IMG/VR virus record: IMGVR_UViG_3300046616_000314
Coordinates: 248,001 to 312,000 of that record
DNA: 64,000 nucleotides
Reading direction: 5' to 3' (one strand)
Both the position numbers and the translations under genes were made by a program. The notes below the pieces were generated by a model. That model saw only the letters and a program-made list of their open reading frames with translations, did not search any database and was not told the DNA's origin. This document shows, piece by piece, positions 1 through 60,283 of the stretch (within the stretch, counting starts at the first letter, position 1; each line of letters opens with the position of its first letter).

Positions 1-3000
1 GTACGTTGTTTGAGTTGCCGTATAAGGCAAATCACCCGTCAACTTACCATCCAAGGACACAGACAGATGGCTTCCCGCTAGCGTAGTGCTATCGAGATAA
101 TATTCGAGTGGCGGTTGACCGTTGGCGTCCGTAGCCAACAGTTGAATGACAGGAAGGGCGTTATTAGAAATATACGATCCTAGATCGGCATCCGTTTGCC
201 ACACAGGCGGGAAGTTTTCTTCAACCACCAGATTGAAGGTACGATCCTTTTGCGTCGCGCCGCTGTCTGCCCGAATGGTGAAGGTATAGGTCTGAGAGCC
301 GCCTTGTAGAGGCGTAGTGCCATCAATAAATGCAGGTTGTCCCGGTGCAGGATTTGGATTGAAGTTCAACCCAAGCGGAAGCGTGCCACTGATCATGGTG
401 TAATTCATGTTCGCGGCATTATCACCACCGGCTTCAAATGTAAGCGGAGCAATGATTGAATTTTCCAGCACTTTTAGATCAATGGGCGTAATCCACTCAG
501 GTTCACCCGTGTATAGAATAGTCAACGTGACGCTATGTGTACCGTCATCAACTAGGCTAAACTGCGAGCCGCTGTCTGAAGCCCATGTTCTATCCCACGC
601 ACCGATGTTGAACGAAACTGTTGTATTTTCGGTTACTGGCGGAAGTTTGCCGCGCATTTCACCCGAAATCATATTCAGTTCGACGCTACCGATGATGTCG
701 GCTTTATCTCTGAATACGTACGTTGTCGCCCAATGATTTTGATCACCAATGCTCAAAATAGAACCTGGGGACATTCCTAAACCAGTGTATACGATTGCTT
801 GTGCATTCCAGAAACGTTGATCCGGGTCAAACTGTGTCGGGTCTTGGACACCATTGACCATTGCATCGACCGTATTATAGTCATATGCATTAAACGTAAT
901 ATTGCTGAATGTTGAATTCTCATTGAACGTAAAGTCGTAAACGTTGTTCGGATTAAGCTTGGGTCCAGTATTGAATAGGGCAGTATACGTCACCATCAAC
1001 GGAACAGAATTATTAATACCATCCGAAGCAACGATGATATCGTATGGTTGCAACGGCGGGATAGCCGCGCGCTCATCGTACTGAATACTTGAATTGGAAG
1101 TAAGTTTGTGACCCCATGGCGGGAAACGCCCGTTCATGGTTTTAGCAACCTTGATGTCCAAATCTTGATTTTGCGACACGTAAGTCATACCCGACCCATT
1201 GTCTAAGACCAGATAGTCTATAACAGTCGTGTTAGTGAGATCATTGTATGGATCAAGATAGTAATTGATAGTATGCCCCTGGCTAATTGGCGCGGTCATG
1301 CCAATGTTTCCGGGTGTAACTAGCGTATTGTTTACATAATAATAAACAAAGTCTCCATTGGGGTCGATTGCATTAATAAGGTGTTCACCACTACGAATTT
1401 CGGTACGACCAAAAATCGAACCCAAATCAAGAATATGCATTCCAAGCGCAGGATTATATGGAATGTTGCCTTGCCAAACCGGAGGCTTATCTTTATTGAT
1501 GATTACTGTATAGGTAACAGTATTCGTGACGTTCACGCCATCGCTGGCAGTGAATACGAAATCATACGACTCAGAATCGGTATTGATAACCGAATTGTGG
1601 ATTGTGCCCGCGCCCGTAGCAGCGTTGAACGTGTAAAGATTTACCGGTGCATTCGAGCTAACAAGGTGGTACGTGAAGACGTTGGTTTCGCGGTCAGTAA
1701 CGGATACGGTGAACGAACTAGTTGCCGTGTCTTTCTTAGTCAAGATCACGCCACTATTAGCGGTCCAAGTCGGAACAGTGTTGAACCAAGCTGTAACTTT
1801 AGCGTTGGCGCGAAGAATGTGAACACCATCGGTAACTTCGACATCCATAATCATGTCAATGTCTTGGGACGGAGTAGCCGGAAGCGTGCCGCTGACCATG
1901 CCGGTGTTGGCATCAAACACCATCGGCGACCATGTTGACGAATGGACAGTGTAAATTAGATTTGTGCCGTTAGGATCGGTTGCCAGCGGTAATGTAAATG
2001 ATGGCGTCACGCCGCCCAAATATGAGCCCAACGACACGAAACCGTTAACAATGGGGTAGTTCCATTCAGGCGGATAGTTCTTGAGAACCCGGAACCAGCC
2101 TTGCGTGGATGATTTCTTCAAACCATCGTTGGCGGTAACAGTGAACTTATAAACGTTAGGGTCGATTTTCACGCCCGGCTCAAGCTCAACGTATGCATTG
2201 GCGAGTGCGGTAATGACAACCGAGTTGGTGACAGCATTCAGGGTTGCGTCATACGCGGTCGAAGCCGTGTACGTTGCGCCAGCCGGAAGGCTGTTTGCGG
2301 TATACGTAACGAATTGATCGTCTTCAGGCGCCAGTGCAATGTATTCCAGATTCACTAATGTATTTTCAAGGAATTCATTAGTGACTGGGTATGTAGAAAA
2401 ATACGGAGGTAGATTGTTCTTTGTTGTGATCGTGAACAATTGTGTATTGTAGTTATTGAAATCGCATGTGATCGCAATAGCAAACGTATACGTTTCCGTG
2501 TTGATGACTTCGGGAAGAATACCAGCCAACCGCCCGGTGTTTGGATTCAGGAACACGCCTTCGGTGATATCATTCGGCTTCGTCGGCGGTGAGCCCGCGC
2601 GAATGACAAACGTGATAGGGCGCATGGCGTCGTCGTGTGCCAACAGGCTGAAGTCAAAAAACTCACCTTCGTATTTCGCAAGACCAAGCGGACCTTGGGG
2701 AGTATCCCAGATAGGCGGCGGAACAGAATATGTGTTATCAACCAAAATGGTAAAATCGCGGGGAGACGACCACAGACCATTCGAAGCAGTAACGGTGAAA
2801 TCAAAAATTTGCGTGTTATCGACGCTTGGGAGATCACCGGTGATTTCGCCCGTGTCTTGATTAAGCTCAAGAGTATAGGGGAATTCGCCACCGGTCAGAT
2901 AGTATTTGATGGGACGTGCTTGCGGATCGGTTGCAACGAGTGTGAAGTTAAATGCAGTAAATTCCACGCCGACGCCAATAACACCAATGGGCGTAACCCA

Positions 3001-3090
3001 CTGGGGAGCATCGGGATTACCGACTGTAGATTTGACAAAATTCAAATTTACAGGACCGATCAAACTGATTTTCTTCAAATTGACAGACAA
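1..3090 (-). CDS. Large virion structural protein with tandem putative-Ig (He_PIG/cadherin-like) repeats; partial, runs off the window's left edge
   Basis: Not in the supplied ORF track. Manual translation from TTG at 3090 (GGAG 7 nt upstream) gives LSVNLKKISLIGPVNLNFVKSTVGNPDAPQWVTPIGVIG...LVATDPQARPIKYYLTGGEFPYTLELNQDTGEITGDLP. The same frame ends ...GKLTGDLPYTATQTTY at base 1. Start and end were frame-checked, not every internal codon. Same repeat style as 20031-30368. Confidence 0.85.
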   Translation of the reverse strand, partial: MSVNLKKISLIGPVNLNFVKSTVGNPDAPQWVTPIGVIGVGVEFTAFNFTLVATDPQARPIKYYLTGGEFPYTLELNQDTGEITGDLPSVDNTQIFDFTVTASNGLWSSPRDFTILVDNTYSVPPPIWDTPQGPLGLAKYEGEFFDFSLLAHDDAMRPITFVIRAGSPPTKPNDITEGVFLNPNTGRLAGILPEVINTETYTFAIAITCDFNNYNTQLFTITTKNNLPPYFSTYPVTNEFLENTLVNLEYIALAPEDDQFVTYTANSLPAGATYTASTAYDATLNAVTNSVVITALANAYVELEPGVKIDPNVYKFTVTANDGLKKSSTQGWFRVLKNYPPEWNYPIVNGFVSLGSYLGGVTPSFTLPLATDPNGTNLIYTVHSSTWSPMVFDANTGMVSGTLPATPSQDIDMIMDVEVTDGVHILRANAKVTAWFNTVPTWTANSGVILTKKDTATSSFTVSVTDRETNVFTYHLVSSNAPVNLYTFNAATGAGTIHNSVINTDSESYDFVFTASDGVNVTNTVTYTVIINKDKPPVWQGNIPYNPALGMHILDLGSIFGRTEIRSGEHLINAIDPNGDFVYYYVNNTLVTPGNIGMTAPISQGHTINYYLDPYNDLTNTTVIDYLVLDNGSGMTYVSQNQDLDIKVAKTMNGRFPPWGHKLTSNSSIQYDERAAIPPLQPYDIIVASDGINNSVPLMVTYTALFNTGPKLNPNNVYDFTFNENSTFSNITFNAYDYNTVDAMVNGVQDPTQFDPDQRFWNAQAIVYTGLGMSPGSILSIGDQNHWATTYVFRDKADIIGSVELNMISGEMRGKLPPVTENTTVSFNIGAWDRTWASDSGSQFSLVDDGTHSVTLTILYTGEPEWITPIDLKVLENSIIAPLTFEAGGDNAANMNYTMISGTLPLGLNFNPNPAPGQPAFIDGTTPLQGGSQTYTFTIRADSGATQKDRTFNLVVEENFPPVWQTDADLGSYISNNALPVIQLLATDANGQPPLEYYLDSTTLAGSHLSVSLDGKLTGDLPYTATQTTY

Positions 3091-3114
3091 GTTACTACTC
3101 CACGAATGATAAGG

Positions 3115-3122
3115 TATTTATG
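3115..3122 (-). promoter_or_regulatory. T4-like late promoter (CATAAATA)
   Basis: TAAATA core ~25 nt upstream of the Ig-repeat structural gene start. Confidence 0.6.
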
Positions 3123-3289
3123 CCTTGTAAAAATTGGAGTTTTTAAAAAACTTTCGTAGATCGGCATTTTTATGTTGCATCCCGCCCCGGTATTCGGTAT
3201 TCTATAAAAAGAGTGAGGCGACAGAGAAATCCGAACCAAACCGAACCAAACTCGTCAGTAACAAATAGCGTTTTTGACGAAATTTATTA

Positions 3290-3318
3290 TTGACACCGAG
3301 CCGTGGAAACGGTAAGGT
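3290..3318 (+). promoter_or_regulatory. sigma70-type promoter driving the large ncRNA
   Basis: TTGACA (3290-3295), 17 nt spacer, TAAGGT (3313-3318), AT-rich upstream. Confidence 0.7.
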
Positions 3319-3324
3319 ACAAAT

Positions 3325-4450
3325 CCTAGCCCACTTAGGCAGAAGGTCTTTGGTTCGCCGAAGATTGCGTAGTGGAAGTAGCCTCACCCGCAAGGGGTGT
3401 ACTCGTTGGATCGAGAAAGGCGAAAATAGGTAATCAACTTCGGTTGATTCGATGAATTGATAAACAAAAGTTCCCTGGTGGGGGAGTACCGCAGTAAACG
3501 CGAGGTTTATCTATTCATCCAATCATCTGAGGATGGTACAGAATTGCAGCTTGGGCTAGATAGTGTGAGGGAAACCTTACATGAAAGGGGCGAGGGATCA
3601 CACGACCCCCTACCAGTAATGGTCAATTCAAGCAAGTCCAGACTTGCCCGAAAGGGTTCTTCTAGTATCGCAAGGTATTAGGAGATAGGTCGGAAAGTGA
3701 TGTATGGGTTTCCTGAGAGGGAAATGTTGAGTGGCTGGACGTTCCGGCTTCTGGCTTGCCAGGGGTTGTAAACGGGCTCTCATAAATTGGGTTCGCATCC
3801 GATGCCTTACGCGAAAATCACTCATGACGGATAGTCAATGGATAGTCGAAGGGTTCAAGCCTTAGCGGGCGAGGGCGTTCGGCAGTTTGAAGGTTGGTGG
3901 GACACCCTAATCCGGTGGCACACATGACCTGAAAAACACCCAGAAGTCTCTTAGCGGAGACGAGGGAAGAGGCGTAAATGTATTAGCTTGGGAAACCGAG
4001 TTAGCATTTGTCGATATGGCACGTCTTGTGATCTTGGGAAACATACAGATGGTATCTTAACCAACTTGGTGGCTAATACCCACTACGTTTTGAAAGCCCA
4101 AGTCTGTATCGGACTCATGTCTGAAGTTGCTTAAGCTCTGACCGAAAGGAATCAGGGGACGCGGTAGCTGCAAGGCGAAACGTTTGATGGTGAAGAAACT
4201 CATAATCGGGCAAGCACCCGACGAACTGGCTCGCAAGGCTTGGTGGGGATTACGGTAGCCGTCGAAAGGACATGAGGTACGCGGGAATTCGCCACCCAAT
4301 CACCCGTAATGGGCGCGATGAAAGGCAGCAACGGTGAATACGGTTTGACCCGCAAGGGCAGATCGTGGATAAGGCGAAGAAACCAGACTCCCAAAGTTTG
4401 GCATAATATCGCCCAAAGATCACCACGATACGCGGTAGTCTCACGCTATC
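3325..4450 (+). ncRNA. Large structured ncRNA, GOLLD-like (~1.1 kb)
   Basis: No credible ORF; bounded by a promoter and an intrinsic terminator. Many GNRA/UUCG-capped stems: 3432-3449 cUUCGg, 3565-3580 GAAA, 3662-3681 GCAA, 3709-3724 GAGA, 3985-4002 GAAA. Long-range pair 3326-3333/3552-3559. The 3' end (GCGGTAGTCTCACGC, 4432-4446) resembles GOLLD 3' ends from memory only. Confidence 0.8.
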
Positions 4451-4455
4451 AAAAC

Positions 4456-4484
4456 AAAAAGGCGTCCTTCGGGGCGCCTTTTTT
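4456..4484 (+). terminator. Intrinsic terminator
   Basis: AAAAAGGCGTCC-TTCG-GGGCGCC-TTTTTT. Confidence 0.9.
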
Positions 4485-4495
4485 GTTGTCTAAAT

Positions 4496-4903
4496 ATGTG
4501 CATGAGGGTGCATATGACAGCGGGAAGATTTAACGTCGGAAGTTCGGACGATGGTCCGATGATCCTGTACTATGCCCCGCCAAGCCGAACCTGCGTCGGT
4601 GTTCCGATGATGGTTCTCGCACCCGATGAAATTGGAATGAATGGCGGGCGCCTGACCAATTTCCACGACGAAGATTTGGATTTTCCTATTCGCGTAATGG
4701 TTGGCTCCGATGATGAATTCGCCGCCATCGTAACTTGGGTTGCGCAGAACACCGGACCATGGTCTTTTTCGGAAGGTGTATTGGACACCACATTTAATAG
4801 ATTTTTATCTTGGGGTTGGGATCGCGGTAGACCGCTCCCAATCCTTTTTTCGTTTTTAAGTGATGACGACGCCGCCATATTCAAATTGAAATGGTCGAAA
4901 TAA
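4496..4903 (+). CDS. Hypothetical protein, 'FxxExDAxxFKLKW' family
   Basis: C-terminus FLSDDDAAIFKLKWSK; likely start ATG 4514 after GAGGG. Confidence 0.75.
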   Translation: MCMRVHMTAGRFNVGSSDDGPMILYYAPPSRTCVGVPMMVLAPDEIGMNGGRLTNFHDEDLDFPIRVMVGSDDEFAAIVTWVAQNTGPWSFSEGVLDTTFNRFLSWGWDRGRPLPILFSFLSDDDAAIFKLKWSK

Positions 4904-4909
4904 TTTCGT

Positions 4910-5200
4910 ATGATCCCTAGGCAATTTTGGGGAACCGCAATGCTTTACACCATGGGTAATCGCGAAAGTTACGAAACGTATTTCGCTACCGATCCCAAGC
5001 CCATGAAACTTGGCATTCGGGATGATTACAAAGGCGGCATCGTGTTTTCCTCCGTCAAGGAAGCCGAAGGCTACATCCAAAAACATAATCACACCACGTA
5101 TGCGGTCTATGGATTGGATTGCACCTGGGAAGATGCGTATTGGTCAGCCGACGATCAATTTTTCCGACTGACCAATACGGTGCCGCTAGTCCAGATTTGA
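4910..5200 (+). CDS. Hypothetical phage protein
   Basis: 96 aa ORF, gene-like composition, directly follows the previous gene. Confidence 0.7.
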   Translation: MIPRQFWGTAMLYTMGNRESYETYFATDPKPMKLGIRDDYKGGIVFSSVKEAEGYIQKHNHTTYAVYGLDCTWEDAYWSADDQFFRLTNTVPLVQI

Positions 5201-5362
5201 CAATCGTCTTAGCTTGGCGATCATCGCAGTTAGTTCGGTGTAGCGGCGATACTCGTCAAAATTTTCATATTTTGTGACGTTGCAGCACGCGCATACATCC
5301 TTGTTGATGTTGAGCGTGTCAACGTACGCCTGAATGGCATCAGCGGCTTGTGAGAGGTTCAT
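5186..5362 (-). CDS. Hypothetical 58 aa protein
   Basis: Manual: MNLSQAADAIQAYVDTLNINKDVCACCNVTKYENFDEYRRYTELTAMIAKLRRLSNLD; GGAG RBS upstream. Confidence 0.65.
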   Translation of the reverse strand: MNLSQAADAIQAYVDTLNINKDVCACCNVTKYENFDEYRRYTELTAMIAKLRRLSNLD

Positions 5363-5441
5363 GGTGTGCTCCTGGCTACCCCCTTACTAAGGGCAAGATT
5401 TGGGTCTCATGTGCGCCGAAACTGAGAAATATTTTTTATGG

Positions 5442-5469
5442 TTAAACGATATTTAATTTGTGCAGTGCA
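5442..5469. promoter_or_regulatory. CtrA-like box (TTAA-N7-TTAA, 5442-5456) next to a TGC-N3-GCA (PhaR-like) motif
   Basis: GTTAAACGATATTTAA is an exact TTAA-N7-TTAA; TGCAGTGCA at 5461-5469. Confidence 0.4.
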
Positions 5470-5480
5470 GCATGAAGTGG

Positions 5481-5488
5481 TATAAATA
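5481..5488 (+). promoter_or_regulatory. TATAAATA promoter element
   Basis: Exact T4 late promoter consensus 30 nt upstream of a small ORF. Confidence 0.55.
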
Positions 5489-5517
5489 AGGCTCTAAACA
5501 AAGAGTGAAATGAGAAA

Positions 5518-5622
5518 ATGAAAACGAGTCCTACAGAACGAGTGATGAAGTTCATCGCTCCTGCCACCCTTGGCATTACCGCTTTGATGACTTTGGCGAT
5601 TATCTTTACCGCCGCTCACTAA
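5518..5622 (+). CDS. 34 aa single-TM peptide
   Basis: Manual: MKTSPTERVMKFIAPATLGITALMTLAIIFTAAH; flanked by a promoter and a terminator. Confidence 0.65.
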   Translation: MKTSPTERVMKFIAPATLGITALMTLAIIFTAAH

Positions 5623-5648
5623 GCACAAAAACTAAATTTGATAGTGTG

Positions 5649-5678
5649 AAGCCCCTATGCCTGCATGGGGGCTTTTTG
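5649..5678 (+). terminator. Intrinsic terminator
   Basis: AAGCCCC...GGGGGCTTTTT. Confidence 0.8.
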
Positions 5679-5730
5679 CTTGACTAAAATTAAAATCGTG
5701 GGATAGTTTAGAGATATAAGGATTCAGTTC

Positions 5731-5895
5731 ATGCTCATCGGTACGGCTATTCAGTTGTTTGCAGTTCTTGGTTTCACGGCGGGGCTCATCGGGCACATTC
5801 GCGGGATCAAGAAATGGTGGTCGGGGAGCACATGGTATGGTGCTCTTTGGGCGATCTTGATAACCGGAACGGTCCTGGCAGCAAATAATATCTAG
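5731..5895 (+). CDS. 54 aa membrane protein
   Basis: Manual: MLIGTAIQLFAVLGFTAGLIGHIRGIKKWWSGSTWYGALWAILITGTVLAANNI; AAGGA RBS; two hydrophobic segments. Confidence 0.65.
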   Translation: MLIGTAIQLFAVLGFTAGLIGHIRGIKKWWSGSTWYGALWAILITGTVLAANNI

Positions 5896-5905
5896 GAGAC
5901 ATGAT

Positions 5906-6019
5906 ATGCGCGGATATTTGATTAACGGTTTCTGGTGGATTGGTTTCCGTCATGAAGGTAAGTTGCTCTTGCTGCGCAAGGTCGGCAAGTCTGGCGACTG
6001 TATTTCGCTCGAAAACTAA
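5906..6019 (+). CDS. 37 aa hypothetical protein
   Basis: Manual: MRGYLINGFWWIGFRHEGKLLLLRKVGKSGDCISLEN; AGGAG RBS. Confidence 0.5.
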   Translation: MRGYLINGFWWIGFRHEGKLLLLRKVGKSGDCISLEN

Positions 6020-6084
6020 ACGCTTGACATATACTCTTAATGTGAGAGTATATGTCATCGTTTGATTTATAAGGACTTATAACC

Positions 6085-6294
6085 ATGTCGGTACCTATCG
6101 TCGTTGTGATCGAACAGACCGAAGATCATTTCGTTGTCTCGGACAACGGCGGTGCCTATGACATGCGGGAATACGATCCCGAGTATTACGACACCTACGA
6201 GGAAGCCGAAGAAGACGCGGATGACCGTAAGGTGGAATACGAACGCCTGGGTGCCAACGTCAGCATCGACAACCAAGTTCCGGGGAAGAACTAA
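6085..6294 (+). CDS. Small acidic hypothetical protein
   Basis: AAGGA RBS; TTGACA promoter-like element ~6026; strongly acidic. Confidence 0.7.
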   Translation: MSVPIVVVIEQTEDHFVVSDNGGAYDMREYDPEYYDTYEEAEEDADDRKVEYERLGANVSIDNQVPGKN

Positions 6295-6755
6295 TGTCCC
6301 ATTACGCTTTCTATCTCGCGACTCAAGACGCTTTGGCGTCTCTGAAGGCGCGTCATGAAGCCATTGTTGCGCTGTATGCCAGCAACAGAAATGGCATCGA
6401 AAATTCCCCGGAACGCATTCAATGGCTGGCGGATGGCGATGACGTGGTGAAGCTCATGGTCGATTACGGAAGTAGCCCGCATGACGAAGAAAAGGCGCGA
6501 AAGCAAGTCCGAGAAATTTTCAATGGATATGTGCTAGACGCTGCGAAGCCATATGATCGCGTGATGTCACTAGTGTACGTTTCCGGTCTGACCCCGGCTC
6601 AACTTCTGACCTATATCGATAGCTTGGAAGCCCCGGCGGTATCTATTTTGCTGGCAAAATCGTCAATTGGCGAATACAAGCTTCCGTTTTCGCCCCGTCG
6701 AATGAAGAATTTCGATCTGTTCGCAACGCAATTCCGCCAATACATCTTGGATTAG
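6294..6755 (+). CDS. Hypothetical protein (paralogue of 6760-7263)
   Basis: Shared ER(I/V)QWL, xEIFxG and ILLAKxSIxxYKLP...NFDxF motifs. Confidence 0.8.
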   Translation: MSHYAFYLATQDALASLKARHEAIVALYASNRNGIENSPERIQWLADGDDVVKLMVDYGSSPHDEEKARKQVREIFNGYVLDAAKPYDRVMSLVYVSGLTPAQLLTYIDSLEAPAVSILLAKSSIGEYKLPFSPRRMKNFDLFATQFRQYILD

Positions 6756-6759
6756 ACCC

Positions 6760-7263
6760 ATGACCAAATACGAACTGTACAAGCAAGCCATCGCTGGTCT
6801 CCACGCTCTGGTAAACAGCGCGGCATTTGTCGATGGTCTGTTCACCGGTGAACGCACCGCAGATCGTGGTTATAAGGTTCATGGACCTGAATTCGACGCT
6901 TGGAATATCTCTGCCGAGCGCGTTCAATGGCTTCTGGATGCCGATGCTTGGTTTGCGAAGACCATGCAAGACATTGATCCGACCGCAACGGACGGTGCCG
7001 AAAATCCCGTTGCTCGCGCTCAGACCAAGGAAATTTTCGAAGGTTTCAAATCGCAAACCAAGCATCCTTCGTCGCCACCCGAGTATTTTGCCTCGTTGAG
7101 CGAGCAAGAATTCGAAGATTTTATCAACAATCTCGAATTGCCGTCCATCGTCATCTTGCTTGCTAAGCAATCGATCTCGACTTACAAGCTTCCGTGGGAC
7201 ACGCAGCGGGTGATGAATTTCGATGTCTTCACGAAGCGGTATCGTAATCTGATCATGGGCTAG
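6760..7263 (+). CDS. Hypothetical protein (paralogue of 6294-6755)
   Basis: Same motifs; tandem arrangement. Confidence 0.8.
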   Translation: MTKYELYKQAIAGLHALVNSAAFVDGLFTGERTADRGYKVHGPEFDAWNISAERVQWLLDADAWFAKTMQDIDPTATDGAENPVARAQTKEIFEGFKSQTKHPSSPPEYFASLSEQEFEDFINNLELPSIVILLAKQSISTYKLPWDTQRVMNFDVFTKRYRNLIMG

Positions 7264-16203: not shown

Positions 16204-17469
16204 ATGAGTGACCTGTCGGAAAATGATCACCGTCGTATTGGGCGTGATCTGAAGTTGTTCCACGTTCAAGAAGAAGCCGCCGGAAGCGTTTTCTGGCACG
16301 CGAACGGCTGGACACTTTTCCGAACTATCGAAAATTATATTCGCGCCAAGCTGGACGCCCGTGGCTATTTCGAAGTCCGCACTCCGCAGTTGTTCACCCG
16401 TAAGCTGTTCCAGCAATCGGGGCACTGGGACAATTATTCGGACAAGATGTTCTGCACGGGCGATCTTCATAGCTCGTATGAAGACCTGTATCCAGAAATG
16501 GCAGACGAACAGTATTCGTACGGCGTCAGTGATGCAACTCATGCCATCAAGCCGATGAATTGCCCGGCGCACGTTCAGATTTTCAACGCCGACAATGTGA
16601 GCCATAAACAGCTTCCGATGCGGATGGCTGAATTTGGATGCTGTCACCGTAACGAGCCTTCGGGCTCGCTGCATGGCATCATGCGCGTTCGTCAGTTCAC
16701 TCAGGATGACGCCCACATTTTCTGTACCGAGGATCAGATCAAGAGCGAAACCGCTGCGTTCTGTCGCTTGCTCCTGGGCGTCTACGAGGACTTCGGGTTC
16801 ACTGATGTCAAGATTGGCTTCTCAACTCGTCCCGAAGTTCGGGCGGGTGACGATGCCACTTGGGATCGTGCCGAAGCTGCGTTGGCTGAAGCCGTCGAGT
16901 TTTGCGGTCTGGAATACGAAGTGTATCCCGGCGAGGGCGCCTTCTATGGTCCGAAGCTGGAATTCGCTTTGAAGGACAGCAAGGGTCGTGAATGGCAATG
17001 CGGAACCCTTCAGTTGGATTTCGTTCTGCCGGAATCGCTGAATGCTCGATATATGGGCGAGGATGGCACTCATCACCGCCCGGTCATGCTGCACCGTGCG
17101 ATCCTGGGTTCGTTTGAGCGTTTCATCGGGATTTTGCTTGAACACTATGACGGTGTTCTGCCTAAGTGGCTGGCTCCGGTTCAAGTTGCCGTGGTCGCCA
17201 TCCGTCAGGATTCGGTGGGCTATGCGAAGGAAGTTGCGGAGAAATTTAAGTCGTTGGGTCTTCGGGTTGAACTGGATATCCGTGACGAAAATGTCTCGCA
17301 AAAAATCAAAGAGCATAGTAACATGGCTGTTCCATATATCGTGGCGGTTGGTCCTCGTGACGAAGCGGCACGAAACGTTTCTGTGAGAGAATTTGGTTCT
17401 CCGCAACAACGTGTGGTTAGTTTAGATCAAGGAATGTTTGAAATCGGAAGTGCCTGTAAAACAAAATAA
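16204..17469 (+). CDS. thrS: Threonyl-tRNA synthetase, catalytic and anticodon domains only
   Basis: DHRRIGRDLKLF, KPMNCPAH, HRNEPSG, RVRQFTQDDAHIF, GEGAFYGPKLEF, WQCGTLQLDF, MLHRAILGSFERF; no N-terminal TGS/editing domains. Confidence 0.97.
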   Translation: MSDLSENDHRRIGRDLKLFHVQEEAAGSVFWHANGWTLFRTIENYIRAKLDARGYFEVRTPQLFTRKLFQQSGHWDNYSDKMFCTGDLHSSYEDLYPEMADEQYSYGVSDATHAIKPMNCPAHVQIFNADNVSHKQLPMRMAEFGCCHRNEPSGSLHGIMRVRQFTQDDAHIFCTEDQIKSETAAFCRLLLGVYEDFGFTDVKIGFSTRPEVRAGDDATWDRAEAALAEAVEFCGLEYEVYPGEGAFYGPKLEFALKDSKGREWQCGTLQLDFVLPESLNARYMGEDGTHHRPVMLHRAILGSFERFIGILLEHYDGVLPKWLAPVQVAVVAIRQDSVGYAKEVAEKFKSLGLRVELDIRDENVSQKIKEHSNMAVPYIVAVGPRDEAARNVSVREFGSPQQRVVSLDQGMFEIGSACKTK

Positions 17470-20030: not shown

Positions 20031-23000
20031 TTAGAAGTTGCCGAGTTGTCCCGGCGGTGTGAATGGTGTGACATAACGAGCCACGCCCTTTGTGATTCTG
20101 ATGTCATCCAAATAACCGTTGAGGTTAGCGGTATAGGATGCAACCGGATTACCACCTAGCAATAGCGCGCTTCCGGTTCCGCTTGGGAACGAGAATGACG
20201 ATGTTTGTGAACCGACGAGATTTCCATTCAAGTAGCAACGGAAAACGCCCGATTGTCTGACAATGGCAATGTGATGCCATGTATTAACAGGGATGCTTGC
20301 CGATGGGCTGAACGTAAACGTGCTGCCCGAACCGCTATAGAACGAGATAGCAGTTCCCGCCGAAGCAGTAGGACCGCCGACGTGTAAGCTCCAAACGCTT
20401 GCAGTGGAAACGTTTGTTGCAGCAGGCGGTGAATAGTGCAGTAGTTGTGAACGATAGTCGCCGCCGCCAGCAGCAGTCAGTGCAGTAATATTGAACCATG
20501 TTTCCATGGTGAAATCACCGGTTCCGAAATCTAGACCAGCGGTAGGGTTGGTCTGGCTTTGAGTGATAGTTTGAGTAACGGTACCTGGGAAGGATACCGA
20601 AGAGTTACCAAACTGCTTCTTAACCGTCGAGATCGATGCGCCATTGGCGGTAAAGGTACAGTTGCCAGTAGAATCGGTAAGAGTGCCTTCACCGTTTACG
20701 AGAACGCTAACGCTCGCGTATTGCGGATCATCATTCGGAAGCAATGTGAATTGTTGCGTCGGTGGTGTGAAGGTTCCGCTATAACGAGATACGCCATTGG
20801 TGATACGAAGATCGGTAATGGCTCCGTTATATCCGTAGTTCGCCGGGACTTGTTCATAACCACCAAGACCGATGCGCGCGGAGGTTTGACCCCAATCCGA
20901 TACTGTTCCGTTTGTTGAACCGACCGCGACACCATTGACCCAAAGGGTAGAAAGTGTACCCGAGCGAGTAAGAGCAATGTGAGTCCACGTGTTGAGCGGG
21001 ATAACCGGACCAACGATGCGGTCAACCGCTGATTCGCGCAGAACCAATTGTTGCGAAGCATTGACACCGATGAAGTAACCCGGTCCTGAACCGTTCGGGT
21101 TGTTGGACAGATAGAAACTATACAGACCGTTCGGTGGCGCCGCCGACGCTGGTTGAATTTGGTGAATCCACGCTTCGATGGTATAGGCGCCAGTCATTTG
21201 AGGAATGCCGCCGACATACGAGAAATTACCAAACGAGAAACCAGCCGTTGTTTGATTGCCCCACTTGCTTACCAATTGGGTCAATACACCGCCACCGCCT
21301 TGAATGGTGATAGCCTTGCCCGAAGAACGTTCGGTCAATTGTGCGCCTGGGTTGCCGATCATTGGCATCTGAACAATAGTATTCGCCAGATACGGGTCAA
21401 CGACAACGTTATATGTAACAACCGCATTTGACGTAGAAGATGCATTGGTCGCGGATACCGTGGTATTGTAAACCGTAGTATTCGATAGGAATGGCATCTT
21501 GCCTGTCAGCAACGAACCGTTGGCAATAAGACCGGTTGGTTCATTTGCCAACGTGAACGAGTTAGCATTGAACGTTGCGCTATAGTTCAAGACGGCGTTC
21601 GAATACGCTGTTGTATTGTTCAACAGGATTTGCGGAGCCGTGTTTGGTTTGTTAGGCAACGGTTGTGTCGGCGGTGTGAAGTTCGCTGTATAGCGACCAA
21701 CGCCCTTCGTATAGCGGAAGTCATTGGTGAAACCAACGTGACCAGCGGACGCGGCTTGACCTTCATAACCACCAACTGTCAGTCGTTGTGTGCTGGGGCA
21801 GAACGTTCCAACGTATACTTGGCTCGTACCGATCAAGTTACCATTCATGAAGAAATAGCTGGTGCCCGCAACACGTGACCATGCAAGGTGGACCCATTGA
21901 TTCAGCGGGAAGGTAACGCCAGCGCCGCCACCGATAATGTAATCGGTCGTCGGAACGTAGAAGCGCAATTGACCAGCCAAGTTAGTATACATCAGTGTAT
22001 CGTTTGCAGTAGTAGTAGTGTAGGAGCCAAAGAACGCATCATATGCTGTAGCATACGCGGTTTTGTAGAACCAACCTTCAACAGTGAAGTTACCGGGTGA
22101 AGACAGTACGCCACCAGTATTGGTAACGAATGCATAGTTGTTAGCCAATGTTTGGAACGACTGTGTTCCCCACTTGCTTTGTGTTGCAGACAACACCGGA
22201 GTACCGGTTGTGGTAACGGACTTACCAGTAAGTTCGGCTGGGACAGTTCCAACAGTACCGTACATCGGCATCATAGCAACGACGTTAGCATAATAGGTGT
22301 CGAGAATTTCCGAATCGACCGCTTGGAAATTAATAACACGGTCGGTGTAGAATACGTCAGCAAGAGCGCGAACCGTTACGTTAGCAGTAGCCGCAGTAGT
22401 ATTTGCGAATGTTACAGCCATTGTACCGGTAGTGCTGTTAATTGTAGCAACGCCCGGCGGCGTGCTTGAAGCAATCGTATAGGTGATCGCAGCCGAAGTA
22501 TCAACCGATGTCGCGGCAATAGTCTTTTGAATAACCGAGTTTGCGTAACCAACCGCAGTATTAGCCGAAGGAGTATTCGTAAAGATCGGGTTCTTGATGA
22601 TACCACCCAAGCGACCTGGGGGAGTGAAGTTCGTAGTATAACGAGCATTGCCGTTAGTAATACGAGCATCATCCATGAAGCCGTTGTACGGAGAAGTCCA
22701 GCTAGTTACGTTAATTCCACCAAACTGAATGAAACCGTTGGGCGGGAAATACATAGAAGCCGTAGGACCGGTGAATGCATTGGTTGTGGTTCCAACGTTT
22801 ACGCCGTTGAGGAAGTGCAACATATTTGCACCGCTACGAACGAACGCAACGTGATGCCATGTGTTCAACGGGAATGTCGCTTCGGAGAACGTAGCCGCCG
22901 TATTGAGCATCGCCGCGCCACTATTGGATTGGTCACGGGCTTGGAAACCCAGACCGCTAACACCGGTAGCAGTACCGCTTAGGTAGAAGCCCATTGCGTT

Positions 23001-26000
23001 ATATGTATTTACGGTCGATCCATCGGTTAGATTCCACAGACAGCCAGAATAACCCGCATTCGATGTATTGGTCAGACCGGGTGTATAAACCCACGCTTCG
23101 AAAGTCCAATCGTTTGAGCCAAAGCTGAAGCGTGGGCTTGGTGTTGTGCGAGCAATAGTTCCGACTTGGCCATTGAAGGACAAGCTTGCTGTGCCATATT
23201 TGTATGTCGATGTCGAACGTGTGGCAGTGAACAACGTGATTGTTTTACCAGTAGCGTCAACCAGATCATCTTGATAGAGCAAGACAACGTTGGAATAGAA
23301 CGGATCGGCTGTTTCGGCAATAACGGTGATGTCTCGAATTGGCGCGGTACGTGACTTGCTGTCTGTCGCCATAAAGCTAACAGTTGAAGCATTGCCAACG
23401 GTCGCGGGAGCATTACCGGTCAGTGCGCCAGTGGAGTCAATACCGATACCCGAAGTCGTGGCATTGGCTAGACCGTAGGACACTGTAGTATTTCCAAACG
23501 AAGCAGCGGTATATGCCACCTGAATTGGAGCATTGTTCGCAACGTATACTGTTGTGCTTTTCGAATTCCAGTACGGTTGAACGAAAGAATTCCAGCTTGG
23601 GGTGAAGTTGGTATTGTACTTCACGGTTGACCAAATATTCATCGAACGAATCAAGAGGTTCGAAATGTTATTGATAGTACCAGCGTTGCCGTTGTTGTAG
23701 TTACCGATAGTCATGGTATCACTATCGAAATATGTCAATGCAGGCGTGGTAACAGCACTTGATGCCACGTTTACACCATCGGCGTACAGATAGATCGTTG
23801 AGTTAATTTTGACCACGGCAAGGTGATGCCAAGTATTCAGAGACAATGTTCCGAACGAATTGGTAACGTTGTTGTAAACGTTCTTCCATTGGTTATCCGC
23901 TGGATCATAATAGACGAAGAATTTAGCTGTAGAACCAATACCGAATACAAAGCGAGTATTAGTAGCACCCGGCGATGCCAGTGGGTTCAACCATACTTCG
24001 TAAGTGAAATCGCCAACCAGCGCACGGATAGAAGAAGTATCCGTGGTCATTTTGGTGACGGTTTGGTTGTAGTAAGCAGCGGTATCGCCCGAATAACCTG
24101 GGGCGGCAACCATGGTCGGACCAGTGGCATAAGTAGTGACCGCCGCAGTACCAACGTCAGGAGCCAAGTTAGTATAGGTGACTCCGGTCGCGCGGTTCAA
24201 ACGCCAGCTAAGAGCAAGAGCCGGGGTTGGGAACACGGACGGGATTACGCTAAAGGTACGAGTAGATGATTTGTTACCGTTGCCTTCTGTTTTCTGAATA
24301 CCAAAGGCATAGCCAGTTGGACCAGCCGCGTATGGCAAGGTCCCGGTGATAGCACCGGTGTTGGCGTTCAAAGTCAGAGTGGACGGAAGGGCGCCGCTTG
24401 TAACTTCGTATAGTGCGTAGCCGAGGTTGTAAGGATCGGTAGCGGAGACAACAACGTTCGCTGTCGATTCTTCGGTAGTTGTCGCCAGGGCGCCCGCCGG
24501 GGTGTTCCACAACGGAGCATTACCATATGGGAATTCAGGTACGACATACGACGCGCCCGAATAACGAGCAACATCTGTCAAACGAACATCATCGGTGTAA
24601 CCACGGAATGTCCAACGCGGGCTTGCACCCGTACCGCCGATGTTGAGACCGGCAGTAGATGTTGCGCGTGTAATGGCTGCGTTGGAAACACGAGTGCCAT
24701 TGACGTAGGTTTGGACAGTAGAGTTACTTACGGAATATGAAACATTAAACCATGTATTCAGTGGAACAGCAGCAGCCGAGTTACCAATGCTTACTGCACT
24801 TGTGCCATTGTATGTGAAGAATTCAACCTTGCTTGTAGCATTGCTGACACGTGCGCTGAAGTATTCACCGACGCTAGCTGTTTTGTAGAACAAATAGTTG
24901 TAGCTTTCAGCAGCGGTCGGATAGGCAGTGAGATAGAACCAACCTTCAACGGTGAAACTACCCGATGTGGTATTTTGATTTGTACCTGTCGCAGCCGCCG
25001 GAATAACCATCGCAGTTGCATTAGACATGCGAGCCGAAGCAGCACCAAACTTGGAAACAGCCGACGAAGTATTAACCGCGCCAATTTGTTGAGTATAAGT
25101 GCCGTAATAATCTTGTAACGGCATTTGATTTTGAGACGGCGTGAAATTAGATGAATAACGCGACGTGCCTACGGTCATACGAATGTCATCGAATTTACCG
25201 AGGAAATTGAAATTCGATAGACCAGTTCCACCAGCAACGAATGTTGTCGCACTAGTCAAAGTACCATCATAGTAATTGGCTGGGGCTCCTTGCGAAACAC
25301 CATCAACGAACAAAGTAACCGCCGTTCCGTTGGAACACATTGCCACATGGTGCCAATCCGTAATATCCGAAATTGCAGCATTCGATACCAAGATACCAAC
25401 GGTATTTTCCAGAATGCGAATGGTGTTATTAGTTAGGAATTCCATACTAATAGTATTCGGAAGACCCTGACCGCCAACAGCCACAATACCTTCACGGTTT
25501 ACACCCAAGCGGTCGCGCTTAAGCCAGAATTCTATTGTAAATGGCTTATTATCCAACGATGATGGTAGAGCAACGACCGCAGTCGAGCTATTTTCCGCAG
25601 CAATAAGGCAACCACTACCGTATTTGGGAGCCGTGGTCCCGACTGTACCAACACCCGAGTTTGTATATCCGGCGTAGTTTATGGTATCGCCATTGAAAGG
25701 TAGGAACACGACGACATTTGCCCACTCAGAATCGGGCATCGAATCGAAGTGGTTGAGATATGTAACTTTGTCAGAATTTTGGTCGAGATAGCTTGTGTCG
25801 TTCTTGACTGTGAAGTTGAATGTCTTTTCAGACCACTTGCCCCAAACGTCAGTAGCGCGGGCAGTGAATTCCGCTCCAAGATCGTTGTTTGTGCTAGGAG
25901 CCAGACCACGAACGGCGCCATTCGAATACAGGGTAATCGTGCCCGGCAATGCAGGGCTGTTGACCATGGTATAAGTGACAGCATCACCATCGGGATCGGT

Positions 26001-29000
26001 GGCAAGTAATGTAACCGAATATTGCGAGCTTTCGTTCGCATCGGCAAGAACAGTGTTAGTAATCCAAACCGGGGCTTGGTTTTGCGTCAATGCAATCGTG
26101 AAGGTACGACCGGTCGAGAAGTGACCATCCGATGCGGCGATGTCGAAATTATACGACGAACCATTAGAGTAAGCCGGAAGAGTACCACGAATTGCACCGT
26201 TAGAATACAGAGTCAATGCACCGGGTAGGCTTGTGCCGTTGTCCAGAGCATAGGTTACTGTATTACCATTGGGGTCAACCGCCAAGACAGAAGTATTGGC
26301 ATACGAAGCTTCAATTTGTGTGAGAATAACACCAGCATTGGTAATCCAAACAGCCGGGGTATCTAGCTTAGATGTCAGCGTGAAATCACGGTCAACGCGA
26401 GTGAAGCCATCCGAAGCACCAACGCGGATGGTGTATGTGGTGTCTTCGGTGACAGCAGGTAGAGTACCGTAGATAGCCGCCGAATTTCCAACGTCCAGTG
26501 TAACGCCAGGAGGAACGGTACCCGAGACGTGTTCATAAGTCAGAGGCGTTCCATTCGGATCAGTGGCGACCAACGGGAAGTTAAATGTTGTTCCAGCCAA
26601 CGCAGTGATTAGACCCGCGTCTGTAGTCCAGACCGGCGGGATATTGTTGATAACCGAGAACGTGAAGGTACGATCAGTTGTCTTGCCTTGCGGATTATGA
26701 GCAGTAGCCAGGAAGCTATAAGGAGTATCCGAACCAACCGAAGGCAACATACCGGTCAACGCACCATTGGCATTCAGGGTCAAGAATGCCGGTAGGTTGT
26801 TAGATGTATAGGTGACTTGATCGCCGTTGCTTGTTGCAACGAGGGTCTTCGAATACGGAGACGATTCCAATTCGTTACCCAGAGCGGATGCTGTAGTCCA
26901 AGCAGGAGGCGAATTGAAGGTGGAAACCAACGAGAAGGAACGCGGAACCGAACGACGCGAATCCGAAGCGGTGATCGTGAAGTTATAAGTCGTGTCTGTA
27001 GCAATCGGGGGAAGAGTACCCGAAATCTGTCCAGTGTTATTGTTCAACGAAACGTTGGCAGGCAACGCACCACCAGTAACGGTATACGTAATAGTCAAAC
27101 CTTCAGGATCGTTTGCATGAACCGTTGCCGAGAATGCAGAACCCTCCGGTTGCGTACCCAAGCTACCAGCAGGAGTAGTCCAGACCGGAAGCAGGTTCTT
27201 CAGAACAGTGATAGAGAACGTACGTTCAGGACCAGTCAGCGTGCCATCGCTTGCGGTGACAGTGAAGGTGTAGGTCTGATCGGTGTCGCTAACTGGGGTA
27301 CCATTGATATCAACGGTATGAACCGCGCCGCTAGTATTGAATGTGGAATTCGGAGGAAGTGTGCCTGAAGTCATAGTATAGCTGACGGGCAAACCTTCTG
27401 GGTCATGTGCCGAGAAATTAAAGTTGAAAGTGTAACCGCTCAGAGTGTTACCCAAGGTACCAGCCGGGGTATCCCAGATTGGAACCGTGTCAACATTCAC
27501 GTCGATGCTGAATTCACGTTCGACAGGCGCGGCGCTGCCATCGGTGACAGTCATCGTGAACGGATAATTTGTGTTGCTCGAAACGTTTGGAGCCAAACCA
27601 GTAATGCGACCAGTTGACGAATTCAACGACAGACCGGTTGGCAACGTTGAACCAACAGCCAGGGCGTAAGTCAGTGCAGAATTTTCAAGATCAGTTGCGA
27701 CAACGCCCGTGTTTACCGGCTTGTTCTTTTGACCAGTGAAAATCGAACCAGAAGGTGTGACCCAGTTCGGAAGTTGGTTCGAATAAGCCGTGACCGAGAA
27801 CGCGCGATCAACACGGGATTGACCATCGGAAGCCCCAACTTCAAAATTATACGTTGTAGCATTGGCAACGATTGCCAGCTTACCAGCGATACGACCCGAC
27901 GTTGACATAGTAACGCCAGCCGGAAGAGTAGTGCTGTTTACGAGAGTATACGTTAGCGGAGTACCGTTGGCATCAGAAGCAACGAGTTGTACTTCGAATG
28001 TATTATTGCCGTAGAACGAACCGATTGTGCCAGCGTTGCTAACCCAAACCGGCGGAACATTGTGTTGAACAGTCAGTGTGAAGGATTGATCGGCGCCCTT
28101 AATACCGTTGAAAGCATTGATAGTGAAATTGAATACAGTGTCGCTAGCGACAGCAGGGGACACGCCCGAGAGCATACCAGCCTTAGTCAGAGTCCAACCA
28201 GCCGGTAGAGCACCAGACTTCAGGGTGTAGACCATAGGACCATTGCCAACGCCGGTTGCCGACAGTTGGTTGGAGTACGCTGCATTTTCAATAATATTTC
28301 CGAGGTTCGAACCTGTGATCCAAACCGGAGCCGAATTGAACATAACATCGATAGTGAAATTGCGTTCGACTTCGTTATAATTATCCAACGAGCCATCCGA
28401 CAGAACAACGTCAAATGACGGATGAGCATCTTGAAGAACAGTCGGAAGCGTGCCCGAGATACGACCAGTGCCCGACAGGTAAAGACCGAAGGGCAATGAA
28501 CCCGGATATTTCAGACGATACGAAACCGCATAACCATCGGGATCGTAGCCTTGAAGTTGATAGCTGAATGGAGTTTGTTCGAACCCGCCACCAATCGAAC
28601 CCGCCGCCGTCAACCACACCGGGGCGGCATTGACGCGATTGATGATCGAGAAAGTACGAGCAACGGTGTTGTAACCGTCGAACAAGTTGACGGTGAATTC
28701 AGATTCGGTATCCGAAACAACAGCAGGTAGTGTACCCGAGATACGACCAGCAGCCGACAAGGTAATACCAGCCGGGAGTGTTCCGCTTTCCAGCGAATAG
28801 CTCACTGGCAAGCCATTGGGGTCATAGCCTTCCAATTGAACGGAAATGGCAGTCTTAGCCAGGGCGTTAGCGATCAGACCAGAAGCAGTATTCCAGATCG
28901 GGTCCAGATTTTCCTTAACGATCAAGCTGAAATCACGCGGAGTGGTCAGTACGCCATCCGAAGCGTCGATAGTCAGATCAAAGGTGAAGTCGCTACCGTA

Positions 29001-57942: not shown

Positions 57943-57944
57943 TT

Positions 57945-58286
57945 TTATTCCTCAATATCAACGGGAGTGATATGCCAAACCGAACGGCTCTGGGGTTTCA
58001 CTCCGGTACGCATGGCGTCCATCACTTGACTGATATTACTGATTCCGCCAGTAATTTCAACAAAGCCAACGCCGACGATGTTTAGGGCAAGCGCATCCGC
58101 ACCCGCCGTGATGTTTTGAACCTTGTCATTCTTAAGAATGATTTCAGTACAATCGACCAAGTTCTTGATGTTCTTGATCGCTTTCACGTGTCCAATTTTC
58201 AGAGCCACCTTGGCTGCATCATCTTCATTGTGGGCGAAGATGCTGCAACCAGAGTTGGCAGAATTGGTGATGCGGTAGATACGCAT
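57945..58286 (-). CDS. Hypothetical protein inside the NAD operon
   Basis: 113 aa ORF abutting pncA and nadE. Confidence 0.7.
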   Translation of the reverse strand: MRIYRITNSANSGCSIFAHNEDDAAKVALKIGHVKAIKNIKNLVDCTEIILKNDKVQNITAGADALALNIVGVGFVEITGGISNISQVMDAMRTGVKPQSRSVWHITPVDIEE

Positions 58287-58931: not shown

Positions 58932-58943
58932 AATATTTTTTCC

Positions 58944-60278: not shown

Positions 60279-60283
60279 AATAA

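What the first reader, a model, noticed from the sequence alone, without database searches (positions are those of the whole stretch)
3290..4484. ~1.1 kb GOLLD-like giant structured RNA as a stand-alone phage transcription unit
Seen: a 1.2 kb gap with no credible ORF in an otherwise gap-free phage genome, bracketed by TTGACA-N17-TAAGGT and a strong intrinsic terminator. It holds at least ten stems capped by GNRA or cUUCGg loops (3432-3449, 3565-3580, 3662-3681, 3709-3724, 3985-4002; more GCAA/GAAA loops at ~4140-4340). An 8 bp long-range helix (3326-3333 with 3552-3559) closes a 5' domain. Known: GOLLD and ROOL are large phage-associated ncRNAs of unknown function that can form multimeric RNA assemblies; typical GOLLD is ~800 nt. 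Inference: the 3' end resembles GOLLD by memory. If so, this is an unusually long alphaproteobacterial jumbo-phage variant with extra 5' domains and no adjacent tRNA cluster. Otherwise it is a new large RNA class.
Basis: partly seen in the sequence, partly recalled or inferred. Interest (0 to 1): 0.85.

Follow-up and report, generated by a model that had tools for sequence, protein, structure and literature searches.

The report
Divergent, extra-long GOLLD RNA gene
The 1.3 kb ORF-free gap holds a gene for a GOLLD RNA, a known phage-borne giant RNA that assembles into RNA-only cages; this copy is too divergent for Rfam's own cut-off and seems to carry about 225 extra bases at its 5' end.

Summary
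Window 3160-4495 is the largest ORF-free stretch of the window. It has a TTGACA-N17-TAAGGT promoter-like site at 3290-3318 and a strong intrinsic terminator at 4456-4483. Eight GNRA/UUCG-capped hairpins lie on the + strand and none on the - strand.

- Rfam RF02032 matches 3967-4447 over the whole model (98 bits, E=5e-26). That is below the curated cut-off of 150, so standard annotation misses it.
- Two models built from other phage GOLLDs, with the window left out, match the 5' domain: an HMM at 3538-3936 (E=1e-13) and a covariance model at 3559-3702 (E=3e-10).
- Covarying helices of relatives are kept here through compensatory changes.

The canonical body from P2 to the 3' end is 889 nt, against 808-877 nt in relatives. 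The excess length is a 226-nt 5' block (3326-3551) with no homologue anywhere searched. It is best read as an expansion of the P1 hairpin loop. The 8-bp helix 3326-3333/3552-3559 would then be P1, starting at the predicted transcription start. That reading is inferred, not shown.

The linker holds a decayed tRNA-like remnant instead of a tRNA. The verdict is a new, divergent member of a known family, possibly the longest variant seen. The host is unknown.

The parts
3290..3318 (+). Sigma-70-like promoter: -35 TTGACA at 3290-3295, 17-nt spacer, -10 TAAGGT at 3313-3318. The expected transcription start is about 3323-3327.
   Evidence: Read from the sequence. It was not listed by the consensus scan because the -10 is weak. 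The relative L190 has TTGACA-N16-TATAAT at the same distance from its P1.
3326..3333 (+). Proposed 5' strand of helix P1 (CUAGCCCA). It pairs with 3552-3559.
   Evidence: Eight Watson-Crick pairs. Pair probability is 0.95 when 3324-3562 is folded alone and 0.1-0.25 in longer contexts. It lies at the predicted transcript start.
3334..3551 (+). Extra 5' block, about 218 nt, read as an expansion of the P1 loop. Hairpins: 3345-3366 (UUCG), 3385-3399 (GCAAG), 3432-3449 (UUCG) and 3516-3535. The imperfect long helix 3446-3465/3505-3524 competes with the last two. The block ends in the ACAGAAUUGCAGCU motif shared with the P1 loops of L157 and L190.
   Evidence: MFE -84.6 kcal/mol with z=-4.33, but z=-4.22 on the other strand. 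Two strict UUCG hairpins on + and none on -; 12 of 1000 shuffles reach two. No homologue found.
3552..3559 (+). Proposed 3' strand of P1 (UGGGCUAG), directly abutting the conserved (G)AUAR motif and P2.
   Evidence: In relatives a P1 hairpin ends 0-5 nt before the same motif.
3559..3966 (+). Canonical GOLLD 5' ('cap') domain. It contains GAUAG, P2 at 3563-3582 with a GAAA loop, hairpins at 3612-3623, 3646-3657, 3658-3685 and 3708-3725, and the long-range helix 3636-3644/3833-3843.
   Evidence: HMM built from 10 other GOLLDs: 3538-3936, E=1.3e-13. Covariance model R1, built without the window: 3559-3702, 48.4 bits, E=2.6e-10, the only hit in 64 kb. Covariation. The window keeps 8 of 8 pairs of the long-range helix, 4 of them by double changes.
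3967..4447 (+). Region matched by Rfam GOLLD (RF02032): first hairpin 3967-4030 (GAAA loop at 3992-3995), variable linker about 4031-4092, then the conserved 3' ('ring') domain.
   Evidence: 98.1 bits, E=4.9e-26, model positions 1-416 of 416. By my count from the NC line of that alignment, about 11 of about 95 model pairs are flagged non-standard.
4038..4084 (+). Decayed tRNA-like remnant in the linker. D-arm-like AUAC-AGAUG-GUAU and T-arm-like GGUGG-CUAAUAC-CCACU, with no anticodon arm.
   Evidence: It aligns to the tRNA or tRNA-like insert that relatives carry at this position. ARAGORN and Rfam find no tRNA here. Its fold is not better than shuffles, z=-0.69.
4114..4121 (+). 5' strand of the GOLLD pseudoknot (CUCAUGUC). 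It pairs with 4269-4276 (GACAUGAG).
   Evidence: These are the Rfam pseudoknot columns ([[[ ]]]); coordinates.
4269..4276 (+). 3' strand of the GOLLD pseudoknot.
4456..4490 (+). Intrinsic terminator: 12-bp stem, UUCG loop, T-run. It begins 9 nt after the end of the GOLLD model.

Best explanation
Window about 3326-4489 (+) is a gene for one non-coding RNA of about 1.16 kb that belongs to the GOLLD family. It sits on a 561-kb IMG/VR viral contig, apparently a very large phage.

Shown:
- Both halves of a full-length GOLLD are present and in order: the 5' domain at 3559-3966, the hairpin plus linker at 3967-4092, and the 3' domain with its pseudoknot up to 4447.
- A promoter-like site and an intrinsic terminator bracket them.

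Inferred from homology with the solved GOLLD structures (env-38 14-mer, S. agalactiae 12-mer):
- The RNA folds without protein and self-assembles into a dihedral homo-oligomeric cage.
- The 3' domains form the rings, the 5' domains form the caps, and the linker points inwards.

Inferred from the sequence:
- The extra 226 nt at the 5' end are part of the same transcript.
- They form a self-contained module inserted in the loop of P1. P1 is a peripheral helix whose loop is 3-21 nt in most relatives, 16 nt in L190 and about 45 nt in L157.
- The module would therefore decorate the cap rather than disturb the core.

The biological role of GOLLD cages is unknown in the literature. The most likely role here, as for other GOLLDs, is an RNA compartment or scaffold made during infection.
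For: - Rfam GOLLD: full-length match, E=4.9e-26.
- HMM of 10 other GOLLDs, window excluded: 3538-3936, E=1.3e-13.
- Covariance model R1, window excluded: a single hit at 3559-3702, E=2.6e-10. It ranks first among non-training sequences.
- Helices of that module covary in 26 distinct sequences: 92.4% of cells paired against 56.6% in shuffles (0 of 500 reach it) and 39-44% with slid partners.
- On 10 sequences, 35 of 45 RNAalifold pairs show compensatory changes. The window keeps the long-range helix 3636-3644/3833-3843 at 8 of 8 pairs, 4 of them changed on both sides.
- The 8-bp pseudoknot is intact.
- Strand-specific tetraloop hairpins: 8 against 0.
- Terminator; promoter with a perfect -35.
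- Source contig IMGVR_UViG_3300046616_000314, 561,116 bp.
- Body length is normal (889 nt against 808-877), so the excess is all 5'.
- P1 in relatives ends at the same motif. The window has no local P1 of 5 bp or more, only the 8-bp long-range one that starts at the predicted transcription start.
- The AGAAUUG motif lies inside the P1 loop in L190 and L157 and at the end of the window's extra block.
- Structures and cage model: Kretsch et al. 2025, PMC12286853, and the review PMC12990946. The review describes the full-length S. agalactiae GOLLD that formed a 12-mer as containing P2-P8 and P10-P27, which I read as P1 being dispensable for assembly.
Against: - The Rfam score of 98 bits is below the curated 150 and is the lowest of all GOLLDs scored here (122-305 bits).
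- No homologue of the extra 5' block exists in anything searched, so there is no covariation for it.
- Its fold z-score is as good on the wrong strand.
- P1 pair probability drops to 0.1-0.25 in the full-length fold.
- An equally long 8-bp long-range 'P1' arises, apparently by chance, in 1 of 24 other loci: L172, where the partner lies inside a tRNA.
- In the MAFFT alignment the window satisfies only 28 of 45 consensus pairs. Some of that is misalignment around its longer hairpins.
- The first hairpin's loop is GAAA rather than the family's CAAAA.
- No expression or assembly data exist for this RNA.
Confidence: 0.82

Rival explanations
1. The RNA is a GOLLD, but the 226-nt 5' block is not a domain of it. 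On this reading the GOLLD here lacks P1, as the S. agalactiae one appears to, and 3326-3551 is a leader, a separate small RNA, or a regulatory region that happens to be structured.
For: No homologue and so no covariation. The z-score is similar on both strands. The 8-bp long-range helix has a chance rate of about 1 in 24 under my search criteria. P1 probability is low in long contexts.
Against: There is no terminator and no promoter-like site between 3326 and 3559. The helix starts at the predicted transcription start and ends exactly where P1 ends in relatives. The two long UUCG hairpins are strand-specific. The end of the block shares the AGAAUUG motif with the P1 loops of L157 and L190.
Confidence: 0.22
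2. It is a decaying GOLLD pseudogene that no longer folds or assembles.
For: Lowest Rfam score of the set. The tRNA-like insert of the linker has decayed. One Rfam hairpin is aligned as an insertion.
Against: Helices are kept by compensatory changes rather than lost. The pseudoknot is intact. The displaced hairpin still exists as CGGG-CAAGCA-CCCG at 4207-4220. The promoter and terminator are intact. The tetraloop caps are strongly strand-specific.
Confidence: 0.05
3. It is a new class of large RNA, an intron remnant, or a hidden protein gene.
For: None beyond the sub-threshold Rfam score.
Against: Full-model GOLLD match at E=4.9e-26 and two independent 5'-domain matches. No group I/II intron, RNase P or ROOL match at E up to 10. 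No ORF above 80 aa and no significant family match.
Confidence: 0.01

Closest known systems
GOLLD RNA, Rfam RF02032 (Weinberg et al. 2009). Solved examples: env-38, 833 nt, 14-mer cage, PDB 9MEE (Kretsch et al. 2025); S. agalactiae GOLLD, 700 nt, 12-mer, PDB 9L0R (as tabulated in PMC12990946).
   Same: Conserved 3' domain with pseudoknot, first hairpin followed by a variable linker, 5' domain that begins with P1, an AUAA-type motif and a GNRA-capped P2, phage location, and size class.
   Different: Scores below Rfam's gathering cut-off. About 1.16 kb against 700-833 nt for the solved ones and about 825-930 nt for relatives here. An insert of about 218 nt where P1 normally has a 3-21-nt loop. 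GAAA instead of CAAAA in the first hairpin loop. No tRNA in or near it.
GOLLD on IMGVR_UViG_3300046665_000548 (locus L130, 607-kb contig) and on metagenome contig Ga0222754_1014488 (L197): the closest relatives found.
   Same: All three share the clade-specific motif UUAGCGGNNNAGGGCGNNYGGCAGUU in the 5' domain. L130 also shares the GAAA loop on the first hairpin and a tRNA-like insert in the linker that no tRNA finder calls.
   Different: In L130 a promoter-like site and a small P1 lie directly before P2, so it has no 5' extension. L197 has at least 516 nt upstream of its 3' domain without reaching its start, so it may be extended too, but the contig is cut off.
ROOL RNA (RF03087)
   Same: A large phage-borne RNA that forms RNA-only cages.
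   Different: No sequence or structure match here at E up to 10.

Membership tests
GOLLD (RF02032) | Conserved 3' domain matching the family covariance model | tested here: met
   3967-4447, model 1-416 of 416, 98.1 bits, E=4.9e-26. This is statistically unambiguous but below the curated gathering score of 150. Other true GOLLDs also fall below it: L127 122, L143 second copy 129, L197 137 (cut off), L133 143 bits.
GOLLD (RF02032) | Pseudoknot of the 3' domain | tested here: met
   4114-4121 CUCAUGUC pairs with 4269-4276 GACAUGAG, 8 Watson-Crick pairs in the model's pseudoknot columns.
GOLLD (RF02032) | 5' domain of the common type: an AUAA-type motif, a GNRA-capped P2 and the following helices, including a long-range helix | tested here: met
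   HMM without the window, E=1.3e-13. Covariance model without the window, E=2.6e-10. Covariation. The window keeps the long-range helix at 8 of 8 pairs. In the MAFFT alignment only 28 of 45 pairs hold overall, partly through misalignment.
GOLLD (RF02032) | Variable linker after the first hairpin of the 3' half, often holding a tRNA | tested here: met
   The stretch from the 3' side of the first hairpin to the conserved AAAGC motif is 79 nt, against 49-144 nt in relatives. No tRNA is present, only a tRNA-like remnant.
GOLLD (RF02032) | Phage or prophage location, often beside tRNA arrays | tested here: inconclusive
   The viral contig is 561 kb and carries genes I associate with very large phages: a ThrRS-like synthetase, NAD salvage genes, ART-PolyVal and a 3445-aa ORF. 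There is no tRNA in 64 kb. tRNA proximity is frequent but not defining: 3 of 10 confirmed loci had none in their flanks.
GOLLD (RF02032) | Protein-free assembly into a dihedral homo-oligomeric cage | not testable with these tools
   The P2 GNRA loop, which makes bridge B1 in env-38 (A34, A35), is present as GAAA at 3571-3574. A GCAA-capped hairpin (4228-4241) and the hairpin 4207-4220 (loop CAAGCA) carry GC dinucleotides like those of the self-kissing loops, but I made no residue-level mapping to env-38.
ROOL, group I/II introns, RNase P | Match to the family covariance model | tested here: not met
   No hit at E up to 10 in 3000-4800 or in 3160-3570. No hit at gathering score in the whole window.

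The most novel reading that the evidence does not exclude
The 226-nt 5' block is a real extra domain grafted into the P1 loop. That would make this the largest GOLLD described. The domain would sit on the cap of the cage, where it could change the subunit number or offer a docking surface for a phage or host partner. Published structures already show that peripheral 5' helices set 10-, 12- or 14-mer assembly.
Probability: 0.45. Interest if true: 0.55.

Novelty: new member of a known kind. Interest (0 to 1): 0.4.

Why it matters
GOLLD cages are among the few natural RNA-only quaternary assemblies, and their function is still unknown. This copy matters in three modest ways.
- Rfam's gathering score misses real, full-length GOLLDs. 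Here it missed this one plus several others at 122-143 bits, so the family is under-annotated in large phages.
- GOLLD occurs as a stand-alone promoter-to-terminator unit with no tRNA in or near it. That argues that its role does not strictly need a linked tRNA.
- If the 5' block is part of the fold, it marks the P1 loop as a natural insertion site. That would be a ready test of how peripheral domains tune cage size, and a natural precedent for engineered display on such cages.

Tried and rejected
- **Rfam at gathering score on the whole window:** nothing. The GOLLD hit appears only in E-value mode.
- **blastn of 3200-4500 against 50,697 phage records:** no match.
- **First IMG/VR pattern (GTGGATAAG..ATAAT..AAAG):** mostly chance hits. 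It was replaced by a stricter pattern that returned 80 loci.
- **Single-sequence nhmmer of the extra block** against all fetched loci and the window: nothing.
- **Exact 23-mer across the junction in IMG/VR:** self only.
- **Clade motif:** found only L130 in IMG/VR, one truncated 1-kb contig in JGI metagenomes, and nothing in 185,579 genomes.
- **Flanking ORFs as anchors for syntenic relatives:** 4496-4903 has only itself among 5.8 billion proteins, and 2635-3159 has no hit.
- **tRNA remnants in the extra block:** none.
- **RNAalifold on the nhmmer alignment:** uninformative because the alignment is not structure-aware.
- **Local fold z-scores along 2400-7100:** weak for the GOLLD body, as expected for an RNA built on long-range pairs.
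- **A cluster of tetraloop hairpins on the - strand at 37.4-39.3 kb:** short stems inside coding sequence, judged to be chance.
- **Host inference from the ThrRS-like gene:** best phage hits are only about 50% identical and are spread over Acinetobacter, Vibrio and Sinorhizobium phages. The 983-aa ORF has no phage hit.
- **Residue-level mapping of the env-38 cage bridges:** not done. The published alignment covers only the 3' end, and env-38 is not among the fetched loci.

Full report
**What is there**

Window 3160-4495 is the longest stretch of the 64 kb without an ORF of at least 90 aa. The ORFs inside it are 63-80 aa and have no significant Pfam or PHROG match.

TTGACA (3290-3295), a 17-nt spacer and TAAGGT (3313-3318) are present. 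The consensus scan does not list the site because its -10 is weak. Several other intergenic TTGACA-N17-TANNNT sites occur in the window. A 12-bp UUCG-capped stem with a T-run at 4456-4483 is a clear intrinsic terminator.

A strict count of GNRA- or UUCG-capped hairpins with stems of at least 4 bp gives 8 on the + strand of 3326-4447 and none on the - strand. Shuffles give a mean of 0.70 and a maximum of 4 in 1000. No other place in the window reaches this count.

**Identity**

Rfam at gathering score finds nothing in the window. In E-value mode the GOLLD model RF02032 matches 3967-4447 over its full length, at 98.1 bits and E=4.9e-26. The curated cut-off is 150, so routine annotation would miss it. 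The model's pseudoknot is intact: 4114-4121 pairs with 4269-4276.

Rfam models only the conserved 3' half. For the 5' half I collected GOLLD loci from IMG/VR with a motif pattern, which returned 80 loci. Ten of 16 tested loci score 158-305 bits with Rfam.
- An HMM built from ten full-length relatives, without the window, matches 3538-3936 at E=1.3e-13.
- A covariance model of the first 136 positions of the 5' domain, built from nine relatives without the window, has a single hit in the 64 kb: 3559-3702, 48.4 bits, E=2.6e-10. It finds 33 places in the GOLLD loci.
- The three helices of that model covary strongly. 92.4% of cells are paired against 56.6% in shuffles (0 of 500 reach it) and 39-44% with slid partners. 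This alignment is fitted to the model, so it leans towards the structure.
- On a 10-sequence alignment of the first 330 nt, 35 of 45 RNAalifold pairs show compensatory changes.
- The window keeps all 8 pairs of the long-range helix 3636-3644/3833-3843, four of them by changes on both sides. It satisfies only 28 of 45 pairs overall, partly because MAFFT misaligns its longer hairpins.

Both domains of a full-length GOLLD are therefore present and in order. ROOL, introns, RNase P and tRNA give no match.

**Source**

The window is part of IMGVR_UViG_3300046616_000314, a 561,116-bp viral contig. It encodes a ThrRS-like synthetase, NAD-salvage enzymes, an ART-PolyVal protein and a 3445-aa ORF. GOLLD on very large contigs of 150-608 kb is frequent in the scan. 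I could not determine the host.

**What is unusual: the 5' end**

From the conserved AUAR-P2 motif to the 3' end the RNA measures 889 nt, against 808-877 nt in nine relatives. The body is therefore of normal size. The excess is the 226 nt between the predicted start (about 3325) and 3552.

This block has no detectable relative in any of these searches:
- the fetched loci, including the 80 GOLLD loci;
- 50,697 phage records;
- Rfam at E up to 10;
- IMG/VR, using an exact junction 23-mer.

The flanking ORFs have no homologues either, so no syntenic relatives could be found.

In relatives, and in the published env-38 construct, the RNA starts with a small hairpin that I take to be P1. It ends 0-5 nt before the AUAR motif. 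Its stem is 5-8 bp and its loop 3-21 nt, often GCUUGA.

In L190, P1 starts right after a TTGACA-N16-TATAAT promoter, and its 16-nt loop contains AAGAAUUG. In L157 the loop is about 45 nt with one hairpin.

The window has no local P1 of 5 bp or more. Instead the 8 nt before AUAG pair perfectly with 3326-3333 at the predicted transcript start, and the intervening 218 nt end in ACAGAAUUGCAGCU. The simplest reading is an expansion of the P1 loop.

Support for that reading is moderate:
- Two long UUCG hairpins are strand-specific; 12 of 1000 shuffles reach two.
- The fold z-score is -4.3, but it is -4.2 on the other strand.
- P1 pair probability is 0.95 for the block alone but 0.1-0.25 in longer folds.
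- One of 24 other loci also yields an 8-bp long-range candidate that is probably spurious (L172).

The review PMC12990946 describes the full-length S. agalactiae GOLLD, which forms a 12-mer, as containing P2-P8 and P10-P27, so it appears to lack P1. The residues I assign to the P1 loop do not appear in the listed cage bridges of env-38. An insertion there should therefore be tolerated.

**The linker**

Many relatives carry a tRNA or tRNA-like insert in the linker. The window's linker aligns to the D- and T-arm parts of those inserts but lacks an anticodon arm, and no tool calls it a tRNA. L130, the closest relative, has a three-armed tRNA-like insert that is also not called. This looks like progressive decay of an embedded tRNA.

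**Mechanism**

Shown here: family membership, domain order, and the bracketing signals.

Inferred from the solved structures (PMC12286853; PMC12990946): protein-free folding and assembly into a dihedral cage, with 3' domains as rings, 5' domains as caps, and the linker inside. The P2 GAAA loop, which makes the one 5'-to-3' inter-chain bridge in env-38 (A34, A35), is conserved at 3571-3574.

Not known for any GOLLD: the biological function.

**Novelty**

This is a new, divergent member of a known family. Sub-threshold GOLLDs are common in the data: 122-143 bits in L127, L133, L197 and the second copy in L143. Sizes range from about 540 nt (L127) upwards. The window's RNA, if it is one transcript, is the longest seen here. 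A truncated metagenome relative (L197) may also be 5'-extended.

Noticed in passing
window 4038-4084: The GOLLD linker holds a tRNA-like remnant with D-arm-like and T-arm-like hairpins and no anticodon arm. It aligns to the tRNA that relatives embed at this place. The closest relative, L130, has a three-armed tRNA-like insert that no tRNA finder calls. Together these suggest stepwise decay of an embedded tRNA.
   Followed up: partly
window 3231-3250: A tandem direct repeat, CCGAACCAAA twice, lies 40-60 nt upstream of the -35 of the GOLLD promoter. It could be a regulator-binding site.
   Followed up: no
window 6025-6057: A perfect 13-bp inverted repeat (TGACATATACTCT / AGAGTATATGTCA, 7 nt apart) overlaps a TTGACA hexamer. 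Fold z-scores are about -5 on both strands, which looks like an operator or a bidirectional terminator.
   Followed up: partly
window 5201-6293: This is the second-largest stretch (1093 nt) without an ORF of at least 90 aa. It has only 41-83-aa ORFs and no Rfam hit at gathering score.
   Followed up: no
window 56149-61375 (-), 16204-17469 (+), 45578-46777 (+), 20031-30368 (-): An NAD-salvage gene cluster (NAD synthase with a CN-hydrolase domain, NAPRTase, cytidyltransferase-NUDIX), a ThrRS-like class II aminoacyl-tRNA synthetase, an ART-PolyVal ADP-ribosyltransferase protein and a 3445-aa ORF.
   Followed up: partly
L143 3129-3958 and 4460-5320: Two complete GOLLD genes lie in tandem on one viral contig, at 164 and 129 bits with Rfam. 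The second has a tRNA in its linker.
   Followed up: partly
L127 2675-3210 (also L161, L182, L186): A 'mini' GOLLD of about 540 nt. The first 5'-domain module is followed almost directly by the 3' domain, at 122 bits, below Rfam's cut-off. It sits inside a tRNA array.
   Followed up: no
L197 (Ga0222754_1014488), whole 1022-nt contig, - strand: A clade relative of the window's GOLLD with at least 516 nt upstream of its 3' domain and UUCG-capped hairpins at the far 5' end. It may be another 5'-extended GOLLD, but the contig is cut off.
   Followed up: partly
L156, L067, L191, L149, L196, L164, L143 (P1 hairpins upstream of the R1 hits): In many GOLLDs the P1 loop has the same six bases, GCUUGA, while the stem varies. 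A conserved loop suggests a tertiary contact. The window keeps GCUUGG next to its P1 3' strand.
   Followed up: no
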